In this document: one piece after another, positions 406 to 56,476 of the stretch
Layout of the letters: each line of letters begins with the position of its first letter
Position numbering within the stretch: the first letter of the stretch is position 1
Virus record (IMG/VR): IMGVR_UViG_3300028920_000001
Span: 186,001-250,000 of that record
Reading direction: 5' to 3' (one strand)
DNA length: 64,000 bases
The notes under the pieces: model-generated
What the model was told of the DNA's origin: nothing
Databases searched by the model: none
Seen by the model: only the letters and a program-made list of their open reading frames with translations
Translations under genes and position numbers: made by a program

Positions 406-1140
406 CTAACCTTTCATATTTACATCGTCTTCGTGACAACAATGACCATAAGCACCTATAGCAAAGTTACAATTATGACAAAGAACACGGTAGCCATCAG
501 GAAAATTTTGTTCCATTAACCAAAGCCAAAAACTATGAGTTTTCTTACCAAGCTTTCTACGGTGTTTATTTCCTCCGCCATCAATATGATCTATACAAAG
601 AAATCCAAGATGAGATTCCCCACAACAGGCACATTTTGGTGGATCACCACCATAATATTGAAAAACCGCAGTTTTAATTACTTCCCTTCTTCTCTTGCGA
701 GATTCACGAAATTGCTCAGCTTTTTCGGGATGAGATTCAAGATATTGTTTATTGTACTCTAAACGTTTTTCTTTATTCTCTCTACCCCAATGTCTGGCCC
801 ATTTCCTCCTTCTATCTTTCACTTCCGGACGTTCTAAATATTCTTTATCGCATAATTTGCACTTATCCTTGTAAATAGGTTTTCCTTTATATTCAAATGC
901 CTTTTGTTTACGAAAATCATCAGAAGTAAGTTGTCCATGTTTAGAACAAAAATATCTTGGCTTTTCTTCTAATTTCTTCCCAGTTCGCTTTCTTTCGCGT
1001 TTTCTAACATCAGACTCAGCTGCACATAATCGACAACGATAACTATAAATAGGTTCTCCTGCTGAATTCGTACGAGCAACATATTTATAGTATGCATCAA
1101 TCAACTGCTCGCCATGGCGCTTACAGGTTCGAGTCTCCAT
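406..1140 (-). CDS. HNH (homing-type) endonuclease with N-terminal Zn-binding repeats
   Basis: C-terminal CACCGE...IDHIDGGG...YRVLCHNCN; two CxxHG...CxLC repeats. Confidence 0.8.
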   Translation of the reverse strand: METRTCKRHGEQLIDAYYKYVARTNSAGEPIYSYRCRLCAAESDVRKRERKRTGKKLEEKPRYFCSKHGQLTSDDFRKQKAFEYKGKPIYKDKCKLCDKEYLERPEVKDRRRKWARHWGRENKEKRLEYNKQYLESHPEKAEQFRESRKRRREVIKTAVFQYYGGDPPKCACCGESHLGFLCIDHIDGGGNKHRRKLGKKTHSFWLWLMEQNFPDGYRVLCHNCNFAIGAYGHCCHEDDVNMKG

Positions 1141-6067: not shown

Positions 6068-6393
6068 TGGAACTTATCAAATATATGGGCGAAGTTGTTG
6101 GTTGGAGTTGTCCACAGTGCGGATTTATAGACAGGCATTCCCTCACGGAACCGTCTCAGTGCAAGCAATGCCAAGAGAAATCTAGACAAAAGCGGGATCA
6201 TTGGAAACAGGACACCCCGCGTGAACAGATGGTAGTCCTGACTCAAGCTATCGCTGGCTACGCGGTATGCGCTGATGATTTGGAATGGACACCTGAACGA
6301 ATGCGCCGAGTTCTTAAGTATATTAAAGAACACTGCGACGATCTATTTGAGCTTTCCAAGTGGATGGATTCTCAATGGGAACCACGAACGTAG
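6067..6393 (+). CDS. hypothetical Zn-ribbon protein
   Basis: CPQC...CKQC. Confidence 0.65.
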   Translation: MELIKYMGEVVGWSCPQCGFIDRHSLTEPSQCKQCQEKSRQKRDHWKQDTPREQMVVLTQAIAGYAVCADDLEWTPERMRRVLKYIKEHCDDLFELSKWMDSQWEPRT

Positions 6394-6407
6394 TCATTAT
6401 TTCATAT

Positions 6408-7007
6408 ATGCCTATGTTGACACACAGGCCCGAAACTATTGACTTTGAAAATGGTGAATTTCCGGATTTGGATGATTTGCCAGATGGCACAGCTAGTGGC
6501 TGCGTTTGGATGATCAATAATGGCACTCCCACACCAGTGTTGGTTATGGATAATGCTCATCAAATTATTGATCATCTCATCACGTGGGCCGAAGAAAAAC
6601 CCGTAGAATGGTTTGACTTAGCCATTAAACGCAAAGATGGTAAATATATTATAGCTCTTCTTCCGAAGTTGCACAAATCAATTGAAAGATGGAGAATTGC
6701 TTTTCAACTTCAATATGGCTATCCATATCCTGAAAAAGACCCGAATATCAGGATTCTTTTCAAGCCAATCCACTTCGTCTCAGGAAGCGCCAACTGCTTA
6801 GACGAATTGACTTTGCAGGAAAATATGGAGGTAGGCTTCTTGGATACCAAGCATCTTAACTATCAAAATCCGGACAAGATGGGTGAGCATATTAAGTTTA
6901 TTGGCCCCTTCAAGCAAGAACATGACCCTTACTTTAATACTTATCTCGACCAAGCTTTGGGGGACGCAACAGAGCCCACTGAGAAATCTCATAGATTTGC
7001 AACATGA
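6408..7007 (+). CDS. hypothetical protein
   Basis: long ORF in co-oriented run. Confidence 0.65.
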   Translation: MPMLTHRPETIDFENGEFPDLDDLPDGTASGCVWMINNGTPTPVLVMDNAHQIIDHLITWAEEKPVEWFDLAIKRKDGKYIIALLPKLHKSIERWRIAFQLQYGYPYPEKDPNIRILFKPIHFVSGSANCLDELTLQENMEVGFLDTKHLNYQNPDKMGEHIKFIGPFKQEHDPYFNTYLDQALGDATEPTEKSHRFAT

Positions 7008-8306: not shown

Positions 8307-8510
8307 ATGCAACATCCTGAGCAACTCTGTTACTTCATCGACTGGCACTACATGGATGCGCATGGTTGGCCAGAGTGGTTGTGTCGACAACTCCGTAAAG
8401 ATCTTGCCAGCCTGGATGAACTCCAAGATGAATGCGCCGAGATTTTCGTCGAAGCGGTGGAAAAGAAGTACGGTGGAAAATCAATCCACGAACTTCGTAG
8501 CTTAGCATGA
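8307..8510 (+). CDS. hypothetical protein
   Basis: ORF, ATGA overlap with next gene. Confidence 0.55.
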   Translation: MQHPEQLCYFIDWHYMDAHGWPEWLCRQLRKDLASLDELQDECAEIFVEAVEKKYGGKSIHELRSLA

Positions 8511-8716
8511 AGTATTTAATCCAAAGCGGCGGGCTCTTTATTGGTCCCCATGCCTTAGATAAAGGGAAAGCCGGTTGGACGTTTGATCTTAACGAAGCTT
8601 TTCGGTATTCTTCTGTTGAAGAAGCAACCAAAGAACAGGGGAGTCTCAAATTCCCCATTCAAGGAAAGGTGATTACTGAAGACGAAGCTCAAGTTTGGGC
8701 AATCATGAGATCATAA
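8507..8716 (+). CDS. IMES-tail protein, MKYVI...W...A..Y family
   Basis: ends VITEDEAQVWAIMRS. Confidence 0.75.
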   Translation: MKYLIQSGGLFIGPHALDKGKAGWTFDLNEAFRYSSVEEATKEQGSLKFPIQGKVITEDEAQVWAIMRS

Positions 8717-9064
8717 GGCCCAGTGGCGGAATGGCATACGCAGGGGATTTCAACGGAATCCCATCAACAGAAATGTTGATCCAAAAAAACCCTGGAAATT
8801 GCTGGAAACCCCTTAGAGCCTGATACACCACAACATGACTGGAAACGGTAAGTGTGACGGTTTGAAAAGAATCAGGATTGGGCAATCAGCAGCCGAGCCC
8901 CTTGACTGGGGAAGGTTCAGAGACTCGCGCTCAGGGCACCTGACCAGATAATGCTGAAGGTGAAGATACAGTCCAGACCACAACGGAAACGGCTCGCGAA
9001 ATCGAGAGTGGTACGAAAATCCCTCGCCCTAACGGGATTGTGAGTTCGAATCTCACCTGGGCTA
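8717..9064 (+). tRNA. trnL: tRNA-Leu(UAA) interrupted by a group I intron
   Basis: acceptor GGCCCAG/CTGGGCT-A; exons 8717-8750 and 9016-9064 join to GGGGA-TTTAAAA-TCCCT; long variable arm; GTTCGAATC T-loop. Confidence 0.9.
8751..9015 (+). ncRNA. group I self-splicing intron (265 nt, no ORF)
   Basis: P AATTGCTGGAAA, Q AATCAGCAG, R GTTCAGAGACT, S AAGATACAGTCC; P1 GGGATTT/GAATCCC with U.G at the splice site; terminal G at 9015. Confidence 0.9.
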
Positions 9065-9171
9065 CTATGGTGATAGGCTATGACAATATCATTCTGTGTG
9101 ATAATGCCATTCAGACGGCACAAAGATCTGAACGGAGGCAGTTTCCGGTCTGGCAGATAAAACCGGATTTC

Positions 9172-9244
9172 GGGAGTATAGCTCAGTCGGCAGAGCCACC
9201 GGCTTTTAACCGGTAGGTCCAGAGTTCGAGTCTCTGTGCTCCCA
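9172..9244 (+). tRNA. trnK: tRNA-Lys(UUU)
   Basis: GGGAGTA/TGCTCCC acceptor; ACCGG-CTTTTAA-CCGGT anticodon arm; GTTCGAG T-loop. Confidence 0.92.
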
Positions 9245-9438
9245 CAAAATGAAATCTGACGCTCAAAAAATGAAAGCTATCCGATTCTTGCTTACAAACG
9301 GTAGTCGCGGAAGCGAATGGCAAGAAGCAGGACTGCTTTGTGCAATCGAAAAAGTCGTCAACGAAGATTATAAAAATCTTTCCACAAGAACCTTACAAAG
9401 CCTCCTAGAGGAGGCTAAAAAATATTAATGCAGCTACC

Positions 9439-9690
9439 ATGAAGCAAAATTTACTACAGCTCGCACAAAATACTCCTGGAACTGTAAACCCTAACGGGTA
9501 TCATACCTGGACACTTCATATAGCGTCGCATCTAGGAAATACTTGGAGATGTACGAGATGCAATTTTATTTATCCTAGTGGTAGTACCAGTCTTTTGATT
9601 AAACCATGCATCCACCAAGTGGACGATCAAGGACATTTTTGCAGAGATAGAATTCGTTCTCAGTTGATAGAAGAAGTCATGGAATCATGA
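9439..9690 (+). CDS. IMES-tail protein, HxW...CxRC family
   Basis: ends SQLIEEVMES. Confidence 0.75.
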   Translation: MKQNLLQLAQNTPGTVNPNGYHTWTLHIASHLGNTWRCTRCNFIYPSGSTSLLIKPCIHQVDDQGHFCRDRIRSQLIEEVMES

Positions 9691-9995
9691 CTTTTCTTGA
9701 TCCTTCTAAAATAGTGCAGGTATCTGACTATTCATATGATTGCTACGAATGCTCGCGCCTAGGGCTCTTACATCGAGATCATCCGATCACAGGTTATGCT
9801 ATAACCACCATTAGCATGTGGTCTACTAACCCATTAGCCCCACTTTCTGAAAAAGAACGTTTAGTGGAAATATTGATTCGTGGATTCTGTAAAGAACATG
9901 ACCACATCCACACTTATCGTAACTATCCTAATTGGACGTGTATATCTAAGTCCGAATACGAACTACTTCAAGTAATTCAAACGATGCTAGAATGA
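9687..9995 (+). CDS. IMES-tail protein, Cys-rich family
   Basis: CYEC...GFCKEH; ends LLQVIQTMLE. Confidence 0.7.
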   Translation: MTFLDPSKIVQVSDYSYDCYECSRLGLLHRDHPITGYAITTISMWSTNPLAPLSEKERLVEILIRGFCKEHDHIHTYRNYPNWTCISKSEYELLQVIQTMLE

Positions 9996-10790: not shown

Positions 10791-10885
10791 GGGGGAGTAG
10801 CTTAGCCTGGTTCAAAGCACCGGCCCTATAACCCGGTTAGCGTCTGATAAGCGCGAGATCGTGGGTTCAAATCCCACCTCCCCTA
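10791..10885 (+). tRNA. trnI: atypical tRNA-Ile with two anticodon-like hairpins (UAU and GAU)
   Basis: acceptor GGGGGAG/CTCCCCT-A; T-arm GTGGG-TTCAAAT-CCCAC; hairpins ACCGG-CCCTATAAC-CCGGT and GCGT-CTGATAA-GCGC. Confidence 0.75.
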
Positions 10886-10931
10886 CCGAAGATCTCGGTG
10901 CCTGTGTCGTATCCGATTATGGAGGCGATCC

Positions 10932-45782: not shown

Positions 45783-46042
45783 ATTTTAAACAAATTATTC
45801 GAAATGCTAGACGTAATTATTTAAAAGATTTTATTCGTGATCAAAAAGTAATTGCAACTGTTCATGGTCAATTTCAAGTTATGGAGAAACAGGAATATGA
45901 AGATTGGATGACGCTTAATCCTGAAGCTTTAAAAAATCCAGATTTCTTTCCGGGTCGTTATTTATTTAATGATACTGAATTCGAGCTTATTAAGCTCGAG
46001 GCTGAACGAGAACGTGAATGGCAGAAGCTTCTTGAATCATGA
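45779..46042 (+). CDS. hypothetical protein, weak tail variant
   Basis: ends WQKLLES. Confidence 0.65.
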   Translation: MNFKQIIRNARRNYLKDFIRDQKVIATVHGQFQVMEKQEYEDWMTLNPEALKNPDFFPGRYLFNDTEFELIKLEAEREREWQKLLES

Positions 46043-55603: not shown

Positions 55604-56476
55604 CTATTGGTTAGTTTTTAATTTTTCTTCTGCTGTTCGGCCAAGAATTTCTGCCATCTTATCTAAAGTTAAATCGCACATGTCATCAACCCAATCCCCG
55701 ATAATATAAAGGTCGCTCCTGCCTTTCAAAATTCCAAATAAAATAGGATCTTTGCGTGCAGCTCTCTCAGCTTTAGTTTCTTCCCATGATTTACCATCCG
55801 GATCATAATGAAGTACAGCGTAATTGTCGAAAATTTCGAGCTCATCAGCTTTCATTTTAAGTTGGGTAAGTTCATCTGGAATTGGCCTGGTGAAATTTTT
55901 AATGTAACTCAGACACATTCCCTTTTTTGATTTCTTGTAAAATTCGACAATAGTTTGTTCTGAAACGTAACTTGTGATACCAACTGAAAGCATGAGCGTT
56001 TCTACTCTAAATGCATTGAGTCCATCTTTCAATTTTTCTAAGAGCGCTATTTGTCCAGCTTGTTTAGCTTTGATAATGGCTTGTTCGTAACCTTTAGCTC
56101 GAGATTCTACTAAATTGATATCCTGGGCAGAGCTTTTTATATTAGTGAAGAACTCTAATATGCTCATCTCAGGAACAGCTTCTTTTATTGGTTTTCGAAA
56201 TATATTTAAAAACCAATTCCAAAATCTTCCCCAAAAGTTTACTGAACGTGCTTCTCCAACAGGACGTACTGCAAGTTGGGTTATTTCTCCTGAATTTCCT
56301 CCTGTAACCATGAAATCAAAGTTATTGCCTGAAAATTCTATATTATCCCCATATTTGGAATTAGAATTCTTTATCCTTTCTTTTCGTTCTTTTTCTAATC
56401 TGATATATTTAGGAAGTCCCATATCAGGATGAAAATCTTCAATAATTGCAAGCCGCTGTTCAGTTCGATCTAACAT
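55604..56476 (-). CDS. conserved phage hypothetical protein
   Basis: long ORF; KDPILFG...LYIIGDW..CDLTLD. Confidence 0.75.
   Translation of the reverse strand: MLDRTEQRLAIIEDFHPDMGLPKYIRLEKERKERIKNSNSKYGDNIEFSGNNFDFMVTGGNSGEITQLAVRPVGEARSVNFWGRFWNWFLNIFRKPIKEAVPEMSILEFFTNIKSSAQDINLVESRAKGYEQAIIKAKQAGQIALLEKLKDGLNAFRVETLMLSVGITSYVSEQTIVEFYKKSKKGMCLSYIKNFTRPIPDELTQLKMKADELEIFDNYAVLHYDPDGKSWEETKAERAARKDPILFGILKGRSDLYIIGDWVDDMCDLTLDKMAEILGRTAEEKLKTNQ

What the first reader, a model, noticed from the sequence alone, without database searches (positions are those of the whole stretch)
8717..9064. Phage tRNA-Leu(UAA) with a group I intron in the anticodon
Seen: complete P/Q/R/S elements, a P1 helix with U.G, and a terminal G. 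The insertion is between U34 and A35. Established: this is the same site as the cyanobacterial/plastid trnL(UAA) intron. Inference: splitting the anticodon could shield the gene or precursor from anticodon- or sequence-targeting defences; no homing ORF is inside, though an HNH gene lies at 406-1140.
Basis: partly seen in the sequence, partly recalled or inferred. Interest (0 to 1): 0.6.

Follow-up and report, generated by a model that had tools for sequence, protein, structure and literature searches.

The report
Self-splicing intron in phage tRNA-Leu
A 427-kb phage carries a leucine tRNA gene whose anticodon is split by a 265-base self-splicing (group I) intron, which is ordinary chemistry at a well-known site but was found in no paper on phage tRNA genes, and the intron appears to have spread recently among related phages.

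Summary
Window 8717-9064 is a class II tRNA-Leu(UAA) gene: exon 1 at 8717-8750, exon 2 at 9016-9064. A 265-nt group I intron (8751-9015) lies between U34 and A35.

- **Intron identity:** Rfam RF00028 scores 65 bits against a cut-off of 50. All core helices P1-P9 are intact, including the U8750.G8756 wobble and the terminal G9015. 22 of 95 RNAalifold pairs show compensatory change.
- **Host genome:** a 426,960-bp tailed phage with terminal repeats, a terminase gene, 38 tRNA-like genes (one of them tmRNA) by ARAGORN's default scan, and only this one group I intron.
- **No internal endonuclease gene.**
- **Signs of recent spread:** the intron is 98-99% identical in two relatives whose neighbouring tRNA-Lys is only 82-85% identical. 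In one of them tRNA-Leu exon 2 is only 69% identical.
- **Origin:** it is not nested in the cyanobacterial trnL intron clade (AU p 0.001). Its P4-P5 domain resembles phage introns in protein-coding genes.
- **Other cases:** a 182-kb phage has the same arrangement, a second intron-bearing tRNA, and an adjacent I-Ssp6803I-like endonuclease gene.
- **Not shown:** splicing itself, because no RNA data exist.
no support. The HNH call at 406-1140 rests on a motif only.

Verdict: a real new member of a known kind, of moderate interest.

The parts
8717..8750 (+). tRNA-Leu(UAA) exon 1: acceptor 5' strand, D arm, anticodon-stem 5' strand, U32-U34
   Evidence: ARAGORN intron-mode cloverleaf. Helix check: acceptor 8717-8723 with 9057-9063, D stem 8726-8728 with 8739-8741. 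5' splice site after U8750, set by the U.G pair in P1.
8751..9015 (+). Group I intron, 265 nt, no ORF
   Evidence: RF00028 65 bits, E 3.3e-14. All helices fully paired. RNAalifold recovers them independently.
9016..9064 (+). tRNA-Leu(UAA) exon 2: A35-A38, anticodon-stem 3' strand, long variable arm, T arm, acceptor 3' strand, discriminator A9064; CCA not encoded
   Evidence: Variable-arm stem 9027-9029 with 9034-9036; T stem 9040-9044 with 9052-9056.
8744..8762 (+). P1: exon GGGAUUU plus intron C8751 paired with the internal guide 8755-8762; U8750.G8756 marks the 5' splice site; loop 8752-8754
   Evidence: Eight consecutive pairs. Found by RNAalifold and in the Rfam alignment.
8763..8780 (+). 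P2, 7 bp with a GAAA tetraloop
8790..8795 (+). P3 5' strand (pairs with 8931-8936)
   Evidence: Six pairs. U-A in the window becomes C-G in L025.
8800..8891 (+). P4 (8800-8805 with 8886-8891) enclosing P5 (8809-8811 with 8880-8882) and a roughly 60-nt P5 extension (P5a 8819-8824 with 8871-8876; inner helices; GAAA loop 8842-8845)
   Evidence: This domain is 72-82% identical to introns in phage protein-coding genes, for example Twort nrdE.
8893..8915 (+). P6 (8893-8894 with 8914-8915; 8898-8901 with 8908-8911)
8920..8925 (+). P7 5' strand: 8922-8925 pairs with 8970-8973. The G8922-C8973 pair follows a bulged A8921, so it is the inferred guanosine-binding site.
   Evidence: Four pairs invariant in all relatives. 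It forms a pseudoknot with P3, so folding programs do not predict it. The binding-site role is inferred from the canonical group I core.
8937..8962 (+). P8 (8937-8941 with 8958-8962, inner 8945-8947 with 8954-8956)
   Evidence: Two compensatory pairs against L025.
8963..8974 (+).
8978..9015 (+). P9 closing helix (8978-8981 with 9008-9011) around two hairpins (8984-8985 with 8990-8991, GAAA loop; 8993-8996 with 9003-9006), then UAC and the terminal G9015
   Evidence: L025 and Anabaena trnL have the same three-way layout. Four compensatory pairs against L025.
9172..9245 (+). Neighbouring tRNA-Lys(UUU), used as the yardstick for divergence
   Evidence: It is 82% (L028) and 85% (L030) identical, where the intron is 98-99% identical.

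Best explanation
Window 8717-9064 is a functional, split tRNA-Leu(UAA) gene of a 427-kb tailed phage. It is probably transcribed within a long plus-strand run of small genes. No convincing promoter lies in front of it and the gene upstream ends one base before it.

The 265-nt intron folds into a complete group I ribozyme. The 5' strand of the anticodon stem plus U32-U34 pairs with the internal guide (P1).

1. A free guanosine bound in P7 attacks after U8750.
2. The terminal G9015 then takes the guanosine site.
3. The 3'-OH of U34 attacks after G9015 and joins the exons. This gives an 83-nt class II tRNA with the loop UUUAAAA and discriminator A.
4. Host enzymes must then trim the ends, add CCA and charge it with leucine.

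It would read UUA and UUG, which make up 53% of the Leu codons in the phage's long ORFs.

The intron has no endonuclease gene and is best seen as a selfish, phenotypically neutral element. It belongs to a lineage distinct from the cyanobacterial trnL clade, and its P4-P5 domain resembles phage introns in protein-coding genes. It has recently spread among related phages by recombination, possibly helped in trans by a free-standing endonuclease.

Shown here: the fold, the splice-site signals, the cloverleaf, conservation and the divergence pattern. Inferred: splicing itself, aminoacylation and the mode of spread.
For: - **Group I model:** 65 bits over the full model, and the only hit in the genome.
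- **Cloverleaf:** class II, with the insert in the anticodon loop.
- **Helices:** every helix from P1 to P9b is fully paired in the window.
- **RNAalifold:** on four sequences it recovers the acceptor, D and T stems and P1-P6, P8 and P9. 22 of 95 pairs keep pairing through changes on both sides.
- **Selection on the tRNA:** acceptor and T stems differ between the window, L028 and L025 by compensatory changes.
- **Phage origin:** the record has direct terminal repeats and is rated complete. It has a terminase large subunit, phrog_2 at 1.2e-24, and 38 tRNA-like genes, one of them tmRNA.
- **Codon demand:** UUA is 36% and UUG 17% of Leu codons in 131 long ORFs.
- **Spread:** in L028 the intron is 258/264 identical, exon 1 is 29/33, exon 2 is 33/48 and tRNA-Lys is 61/74. 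In L030 the intron is 262/265 and both exons are 100% identical, but tRNA-Lys is 63/74 and upstream DNA is 61-92% identical.
- **Lineage:** the three phage tRNA-Leu introns form a supported clade (97/92) outside a supported bacterial tRNA-intron clade (99/98). 202 phage records match its P4-P5 core, and none of the rows shown lies under an annotated tRNA.
- **Help in trans is plausible:** the 182-kb phage has an I-Ssp6803I-like PD-(D/E)XK gene directly downstream of its intron-bearing tRNA-Leu.
Against: - No RNA data exist: all 12 public runs that hold the stretch are DNA. Splicing, processing and charging are therefore untested.
- The window's phage has no identified endonuclease next to the intron, and no PF11645 match. 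That search also found nothing in its control genomes, so its negative result is weak.
- High intron identity could partly reflect strong purifying selection on the ribozyme rather than transfer.
- P1 uses four nucleotides of the anticodon stem, so P1 and the anticodon stem compete. No P10 pairing is apparent.
- The genome also has a 76-nt tRNA with anticodon UAA, so this gene may be redundant.
- The covariation rests on only three distinct lineages.
Confidence: 0.82

Rival explanations
1. Adaptive shield. The intron is kept because splitting the anticodon protects the tRNA gene or its precursor from host anticodon nucleases or sequence-targeting defences.
For: Only indirect. The phage invests heavily in its own tRNAs. 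An intron at a nuclease's DNA target site does protect that allele, which is established for homing endonucleases. An endonuclease gene sits beside the homologous intron in L018.
Against: The mature product has a normal UUUAAAA loop, identical to that of the intron-less 76-nt tRNA(UAA) of the same genome. The working tRNA is therefore as exposed as any other. Only one of the genome's roughly 38 tRNA genes has a group I intron. The divergence pattern fits a spreading selfish element.
Confidence: 0.08
2. Host capture. The phage picked up a whole bacterial, cyanobacterial-type trnL(UAA) gene with its resident intron, and the intron has simply been inherited with it.
For: The insertion site and ORF-less state are the same. 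The P9 three-way layout is the same as in Anabaena trnL. L025's P8 carries a 20-nt motif shared with cyanobacterial trnL introns. A sister position to the bacterial tRNA-intron clade is not rejected (AU p 0.476).
Against: The supported bacterial clade excludes the phage introns. Placing all tRNA-Leu(UAA) introns in one clade is rejected (AU p 0.0011). blastn finds no cyanobacterial intron similar to the window's, and no phage record similar to Anabaena trnL. The P8 motif is also common in non-tRNA introns: 34 of 80 bacterial loci examined and 114 of 116 viral loci. The P4-P5 domain matches introns in phage protein-coding genes.
Confidence: 0.1
3. Dead relic. The gene is a decaying pseudogene or the ribozyme no longer splices, and the 76-nt tRNA(UAA) does the decoding.
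For: A second tRNA with anticodon UAA exists. There is no expression evidence.
Against: Every ribozyme and tRNA helix is intact. Changes between relatives are compensatory. The unit is more conserved than its neighbours in L030.
Confidence: 0.05
4. ARAGORN's reading: a tRNA-Ser(CGA) with a 263-nt intron between positions 35 and 36.
For: ARAGORN in intron mode outputs this call.
Against: Those boundaries make the 5' exon end in C and the intron end in C. That violates the U.G and terminal-G rules of group I splicing, and both signals are present one base away. The discriminator is A, not the G of bacterial tRNA-Ser (established knowledge). ARAGORN itself calls Leu(taa) for the homologous L005/L025 gene. 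It also miscalls several cyanobacterial trnL genes as Ser(aga).
Confidence: 0.02

Closest known systems
[quoted passage not shown] Anabaena pre-tRNA-Leu; Xu et al. 1990 and Kuhsel et al. 1990, cited in PMC3984707)
   Same: Insertion between U34 and A35 of a class II tRNA-Leu(UAA). No ORF. Similar size (221-325 nt in the cyanobacterial genes fetched here). P1 built on the last bases of exon 1 with a U.G wobble. P9 closing helix around two hairpins.
   Different: It is not in that clade and has no blastn-level similarity to it. It has a roughly 60-nt P5 extension. Its P1 reaches four bases into the anticodon stem. It lies in a phage genome.
Group I introns in phage protein-coding genes (Twort nrdE, N4-like RNA polymerase genes, ICP1, phiKZ-like and PBS1-like phages)
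   Same: The P3-P5 core is 72-82% identical over 95-140 nt in 202 phage records. The viral setting is the same. The tree does not separate them from the phage tRNA introns.
   Different: Those introns interrupt genes for RNA polymerase, ribonucleotide reductase, capsid and tail proteins, and endonuclease genes lie beside some of them. This one interrupts a tRNA anticodon and has no ORF.
Other bacterial tRNA group I introns: tRNA-Ile(CAU) of Azoarcus, tRNA-Arg(CCU), tRNA-fMet with I-Ssp6803I
   Same: A self-splicing intron in the anticodon loop of a tRNA. Examples in tRNA-Arg(CCT), Thr, Asn and Gln genes of several phyla were fetched here.
   Different: A different tRNA and position in the loop. 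They group with the cyanobacterial clade, not with the phage introns.
Introns in tRNA genes of Lak megaphages (Devoto et al., preprint 10.1101/356790)
   Same: Huge phages whose tRNA genes carry highly conserved inserts.
   Different: Those were called 'enigmatic', were predicted with eukaryotic tRNAscan settings, and were not reported as group I introns. This one is a full group I ribozyme.
Collaborative homing: an ORF-less intron mobilised by a free-standing endonuclease that cuts the intron-less site (cyanophage psbA; recalled from my own knowledge, not tested here)
   Same: An ORF-less intron that is more conserved than its flanks. In the 182-kb relative an I-Ssp6803I-like endonuclease gene lies right beside the intron-bearing gene.
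   Different: No adjacent endonuclease was found in the window's phage. Cleavage of an intron-less tRNA-Leu site has not been tested.

Membership tests
Group I catalytic intron (Rfam RF00028) | Covariance-model score at or above the curated gathering score | tested here: met
   65.0 bits against 50, E 3.3e-14, model positions 1-253 of 253; repeated.
Group I catalytic intron (Rfam RF00028) | Conserved core: P3-P8 with paired P4, P6 and P7 (the P/Q/R/S elements) and the P3/P7 pseudoknot | tested here: met
   All helices are fully complementary. RNAalifold recovers P3, P4, P5, P6 (inner helix), P8 and P9. P7 is invariant in all relatives.
Group I catalytic intron (Rfam RF00028) | 5' splice site after a U that forms a U.G wobble in P1; the intron ends in G | tested here: met
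   U8750.G8756 lies within an 8-bp P1, and G9015 directly precedes exon 2.
Group I catalytic intron (Rfam RF00028) | Guanosine-dependent self-splicing | not testable with these tools
   No RNA run holds the locus. An in vitro assay is needed.
tRNA-Leu (bacterial class II) | Cloverleaf with long variable arm, 3-bp D stem, discriminator A73 and a Leu anticodon after splicing | tested here: met
   ARAGORN cloverleaf and helix check. The loop reads UUUAAAA by the group I splice rules.
tRNA-Leu (bacterial class II) | Charged by leucyl-tRNA synthetase | not testable with these tools
   No synthetase of this class is encoded by the phage. The host is unknown.
Cyanobacterial/plastid trnL(UAA) intron lineage | Insertion between U34 and A35 of tRNA-Leu(UAA) | tested here: met
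   Same junction as in Anabaena and about 35 other cyanobacterial genes fetched.
Cyanobacterial/plastid trnL(UAA) intron lineage | Descent within that clade of introns | tested here: not met
   A supported clade (99/98) of 16 cyanobacterial trnL-type introns (one from an unclassified bacterium) plus 4 other bacterial tRNA introns excludes the phage introns. Placing all tRNA-Leu introns in one clade is rejected, AU p 0.0011. A sister position is not excluded (p 0.476).
Subgroup IC3 architecture | Compact core with P2 but without P2.1, P5abc or P7.1/P7.2; GNRA loops L2 and L9 docking on P8 and P5 | tested here: inconclusive
   P2 with a GAAA loop and a GAAA loop in P9a are present. P8 follows P3 directly, so there is no P7.1/P7.2. 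However, P5 carries a roughly 60-nt extension, and no subgroup-specific model was available.
Mobile group I intron with a homing endonuclease gene | Endonuclease ORF inside the intron | tested here: not met
   The intron is 265 nt and has no sense ORF. For contrast, the viral tRNA-Leu intron in L206 carries a 161-aa HNH ORF.

The most novel reading that the evidence does not exclude
A lineage of endonuclease-less group I introns drawn from the phage intron pool colonised the U34/A35 site of tRNA-Leu(UAA) independently of the cyanobacterial intron. It is now actively spreading among co-occurring huge phages of sediments and hot springs. Free-standing nucleases that cut the intron-less anticodon region mobilise it in trans, such as the I-Ssp6803I-like gene beside it in the 182-kb phage. 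On this reading, phage tRNA genes are a previously unrecognised arena for intron homing.
Probability: 0.3. Interest if true: 0.65.

Novelty: new member of a known kind. Interest (0 to 1): 0.5.

Why it matters
Group I introns at the anticodon of tRNA-Leu(UAA) are a textbook case of an ancient bacterial and plastid intron. Phage group I introns are a textbook case of mobile introns in protein-coding genes. A 2014 review states that every phage intron then known lies in a protein-coding gene, despite the many phage tRNA genes (PMC3984707). The Lak megaphage preprint called its tRNA introns unprecedented and left them unclassified.

This locus and its relatives show that true group I ribozymes do occupy phage tRNA genes. 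The other cases found here are:

- a second intron-bearing tRNA in the 182-kb phage;
- a viral tRNA(CAU);
- a viral tRNA-Leu with an HNH-bearing intron.

There are also practical consequences:

- Default tRNA finders miss such genes, and intron mode can assign the wrong identity (here Ser instead of Leu). tRNA inventories of huge phages are therefore undercounted.
- The intron is a compact natural ribozyme, and the source metagenome already contains variants of it.
- The contrast between 98-99% intron identity and 69-88% identity of the flanking RNA genes offers a testable case of intron movement without an internal endonuclease.

Tried and rejected
- **Expression evidence.** The search of public runs found 12 holders, all DNA and none RNA. 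Laying four of them gave contigs only, so nothing on splicing.
- **Intron-less orthologues in related phages.** A search with the 69-aa upstream gene found no relatives in viral contigs. One hot-spring contig has an intron-less tRNA-Leu(UAA)-like gene, but in a different context, so it may belong to another organism.
- **Cyanobacterial trnL against 50,697 phage records.** No match.
- **The HNH call for ORF 406-1140.** No match in Pfam (even at E up to 5), PHROGs or PDB. The genome's Pfam HNH matches are at 71.7 kb and 352.7 kb.
- **Endonuclease beside the window's intron.** The small flanking ORFs scanned have no family. PF11645 found nothing in the genome, but that search's controls also found nothing, so it is uninformative. 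tblastn with the L018 nuclease found nothing.
- **Phage-encoded CCA-adding enzyme and class Ia synthetase.** None.
- **Terminase Pfam models PF03237 and PF17289.** No match; phrog_2 did match.
- **Promoter and terminator scan.** Nothing above chance near the gene.
- **ARAGORN's Ser(CGA) reading.** Rejected on the splice rules.
- **Own covariance model of the whole intron.** Not built, because 265 positions exceed the stated calibration limit. MAFFT, RNAalifold and IQ-TREE were used instead, so the intron tree rests on a sequence alignment of 236 columns with an unresolved backbone.
- **Joined exons.** The exons were analysed by reference, and ARAGORN was run on the unspliced DNA.

Full report

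Yes. Rfam's group I intron model (RF00028) matches window 8739-8996 over its whole length. The score is 65.0 bits against a gathering score of 50, E 3.3e-14. It is the only such match in the genome.

ARAGORN in default mode sees only three tRNAs in the window and misses this gene. Allowed to look for inserts, and run on the unspliced DNA, it draws a class II cloverleaf over 8717-9065 with about 263 nt in the anticodon loop.

**Exact anatomy**

Reading the sequence against the group I rules gives a single consistent solution.

- The exon bases GGGAUUU (8744-8750) plus C8751 pair with 8755-8762. This makes an 8-bp P1 in which U8750 pairs with G8756.
- The intron ends in G9015.
- Exon 1 is therefore 8717-8750 (34 nt), the intron 8751-9015 (265 nt), and exon 2 9016-9064 (49 nt).
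- The ligated anticodon loop reads UUUAAAA, that is U33, anticodon UAA, A37.
- The discriminator is A9064. CCA is not encoded.

ARAGORN's call, Ser(CGA) with boundaries one base to the right, would end the exon in C and the intron in C, so I reject it. ARAGORN calls the homologous gene in L005/L025 Leu(taa). It also miscalls several genuine cyanobacterial trnL genes as Ser(aga).

The insertion point, between U34 and A35, is the same as in Anabaena and about 35 other cyanobacterial trnL genes fetched here.

**The fold**

All helices are fully complementary in the window:

- P1
- P2 (7 bp, GAAA loop)
- P3 (8790-8795 with 8931-8936)
- P4 (8800-8805 with 8886-8891)
- P5, with a roughly 60-nt extension ending in a GAAA loop
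- P6
- P7 (8922-8925 with 8970-8973, next to a bulged A8921)
- P8
- P9, a closing helix around two hairpins

P8 follows P3 directly, so there is no P7.1/P7.2.

RNAalifold on the window, L030, L028 and L025 finds the tRNA stems and P1-P6, P8 and P9 without any input from me. It predicts 95 pairs, and 22 of them are kept through changes on both sides. Compensatory changes occur in P3, the P5 extension, P8, P9a, P9b, and the acceptor and T stems. P7 is a pseudoknot that folding programs cannot draw; it is invariant.

One detail stands out. The guide 8757-8762 (AAUCCC) repeats the AAUCCC at 9018-9023 in exon 2. The 5' strand of the anticodon stem can therefore pair first with the guide and, after splicing, with exon 2. 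I see no P10 pairing. As in the Anabaena system (Zaug et al. 1993, listed in PMC3984707), the tRNA body probably holds the exons together. That last point is inference.

**The genome around it**

The window is bases 186,001-250,000 of a 426,960-bp virus record with direct terminal repeats, rated complete. GC content is 40%.

- It encodes a terminase large subunit (phrog_2, 1.2e-24).
- The window itself carries genes for a DNA ligase, a DHH phosphoesterase, a dNMP kinase and an endolysin-like domain, plus an AAA ATPase.
- The genome has 38 tRNA-like genes, one of them tmRNA, by ARAGORN's default scan.
- The split gene sits one base after the stop codon of a 69-aa ORF, in a long plus-strand run of small genes. 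No convincing promoter lies in front of it.
- tRNA-Lys(UUU) follows 107 nt downstream.

UUA and UUG make up 36% and 17% of Leu codons in 131 long ORFs, so this anticodon is the one most in demand. The phage encodes neither a CCA-adding enzyme nor a class Ia synthetase that Pfam detects. Maturation and charging must therefore rely on the host.

**Relatives**

Pattern scans found the same split gene in the following places:

- L026: near-identical.
- L030: a relative whose flanking genes are about 87% identical.
- L028: a 1,017-bp contig from the same sample as the window.
- A 182,739-bp phage contig held as L005, L018 and L025, where the intron is 69% identical.

Contigs of hot-spring, wetland and salt-marsh metagenomes also carry it. 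The hot-spring contigs cover 8307-9078 with about 65 differences.

**Signs of recent movement**

| Segment | L028 vs window | L030 vs window |
|---|---|---|
| Intron | 258/264 (97.7%) | 262/265 (98.9%) |
| tRNA-Leu exon 1 | 29/33 | 34/34 |
| tRNA-Leu exon 2 | 33/48 | 49/49 |
| tRNA-Lys | 61/74 (82%) | 63/74 (85%) |
| Other DNA | rest of contig about 78% | upstream 61-92% |

An intron that is far better conserved than the structured RNA genes around it fits one of two histories. In L028 the intron alone would have been transferred recently. In L030 the intron would have been transferred together with co-converted exons. Very strong selection on the ribozyme is the alternative explanation and is not excluded.

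**Origin**

An IQ-TREE of 46 introns (236 columns) gave these results:

- The window, L028 and L025 form a supported clade (97/92).
- Sixteen cyanobacterial trnL-type introns (one from an unclassified bacterium), with bacterial tRNA-Thr, Asn, Arg and Gln introns, form another supported clade (99/98) that excludes the phage introns.
- The backbone is unresolved.

AU tests:

- A sister position of the phage clade to the bacterial tRNA-intron clade is not rejected (p 0.476).
- A single clade of all tRNA-Leu(UAA) introns is rejected (p 0.0011).

blastn finds no cyanobacterial intron like the window's, and no phage record like Anabaena trnL. In contrast, 202 phage records match the window's P3-P5 core at 72-82% identity. 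The annotated ones among the rows shown lie in or beside protein-coding genes, and none lies under a tRNA: Twort nrdE, RNA polymerase genes, DNA polymerase, tape measure and capsid genes.

So this is not a recent loan from cyanobacteria. Whether the shared site reflects deep common ancestry or a second colonisation stays open.

**Other viral cases and nucleases**

- **The 182-kb phage, second intron.** It has a second group I intron (58.7 bits) in a neighbouring tRNA.
- **The 182-kb phage, nuclease.** Directly downstream of its split tRNA-Leu lies an ORF with a PD-(D/E)XK domain (PF11645, 1.2e-8, above the cut-off). The ORF matches PDB 2OST (E 0.0026), which is the homing endonuclease I-Ssp6803I. 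[quoted passage not shown]
- **Viral contigs sharing L025's P8 motif.** Two of 116 carry the intron in a tRNA. One is a tRNA(CAU) split after U36. The other is a tRNA-Leu(UAA) with a 688-nt intron at U34/A35 that carries a 161-aa HNH ORF.
- **The window's phage.** I found no nuclease beside the intron.

Nothing here supports a shield against anticodon nucleases. The spliced tRNA has the same loop as the genome's intron-less tRNA(UAA), and only one of the genome's tRNA genes carries a group I intron. The defensible version is the standard one: an intron at a homing endonuclease's target site makes that allele immune.

The 'HNH gene' at 406-1140 shows a CxxC...DH...N...CxxCN pattern but has no profile or structure match. 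It lies 7.6 kb away on the other strand.

**Novelty**

The 2014 review of bacterial group I introns says that all phage introns then known are in protein-coding genes, despite the many phage tRNA genes. The Lak megaphage preprint reports unclassified tRNA introns as unprecedented. The huge-phage survey of 2020 does not mention introns. Five full-text searches found no report of a group I intron in a phage tRNA gene. The library lacks most subscription journals, so this is absence of evidence only.

I rate it a new member of a known kind, of moderate interest.

**Limits**

- Splicing is inferred, not shown.
- The covariation rests on three lineages.
- The tree rests on a sequence alignment.
- Read laying was given 1,201 letters.
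- No sequence was taken for human.

Noticed in passing
window 9099-9135 (spacer between tRNA-Leu and tRNA-Lys); further copies at genome 12851, 145031 and 376364 (plus strand) and 45957-45993 and 67888-67924 (minus strand): A 37-nt unit occurs as six dispersed single copies in the phage genome, each preceded by a TATAAT-like box. In hot-spring metagenome contigs the same unit recurs head to tail, with 15-39 unrelated GC-rich letters between copies, at summed depths of 400-640 against 16-33 for the phage relative. That looks like a CRISPR array whose repeat the phage carries as solitary units, which makes an RNA anti-CRISPR a lead worth testing. A phage promoter or leader is the alternative. 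It has no Rfam match, and one other viral contig holds a single copy.
   Followed up: partly
window 10791-10887: A 97-nt class II tRNA (Rfam tRNA 53 bits, long variable arm, discriminator A, G1.U72) has a 9-nt anticodon loop, CCCUAUAAC. ARAGORN calls it Ile(tat), or Tyr(ata) with a 2-nt 'intron'. Its identity is unclear. It is also present in L026.
   Followed up: partly
genome 109783-113049 (outside the window, minus strand): Five 75-76-nt tRNAs with all the other Leu anticodons plus UAA (GAG, UAG, CAA, CAG, UAA) share one body and a short variable loop. They are class-I-like 'Leu' tRNAs. The intron-bearing gene is the only class II tRNA-Leu that ARAGORN found.
   Followed up: partly
genome 80541-80615 (outside the window, minus strand): A 75-nt tRNA with anticodon UCA, labelled SeC by ARAGORN, may be an opal suppressor. 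Codon reassignment was not examined, and no other genetic code was used.
   Followed up: no
L025:3607-3922 (182,739-bp phage contig): A second group I intron (RF00028 58.7 bits) sits in the anticodon loop of a neighbouring tRNA. By the splice rules the anticodon would be UGU (Thr) or UUU (Lys); ARAGORN's 'tca' call is unreliable.
   Followed up: partly
L018: about 6270-6800, minus strand: A free-standing ORF directly downstream of the intron-bearing tRNA-Leu has an N-terminal GcrA-like helix-turn-helix and a PD-(D/E)XK domain (PF11645 1.2e-8; PDB 2OST, which is I-Ssp6803I, E 0.0026). It is a candidate trans-acting homing endonuclease. The reading frame stays open back through exon 2 into the intron.
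   Followed up: partly
L203:6977-7286 and L206:9042-9826 (viral contigs of 88 kb and 113 kb): L203 is a viral tRNA(CAU) with a group I intron after U36, as in proteobacterial tRNA-Ile(CAU). L206 is a viral tRNA-Leu(UAA) with a 688-nt intron at U34/A35 that encodes a 161-aa HNH endonuclease.
   Followed up: partly
window 406-1140, minus strand: A 244-aa Cys-rich ORF has a C-terminal CxxC...DH...N...CxxCN pattern, which is HNH-like by eye. It has no Pfam, PHROG or PDB match.
   Followed up: yes
L028 and L030 against window 9065-9457: The region after tRNA-Leu is a hot spot of rearrangement. The spacer before tRNA-Lys differs in length and sequence. L030 has about 535 extra bases after tRNA-Lys, holding a 112-aa Cys-rich ORF. 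L028 lacks window 9249-9700.
   Followed up: partly
window 55604-56476, minus strand: A 290-aa ORF matches a transposase family (phrog_10081, 1.1e-21) inside the phage genome.
   Followed up: no
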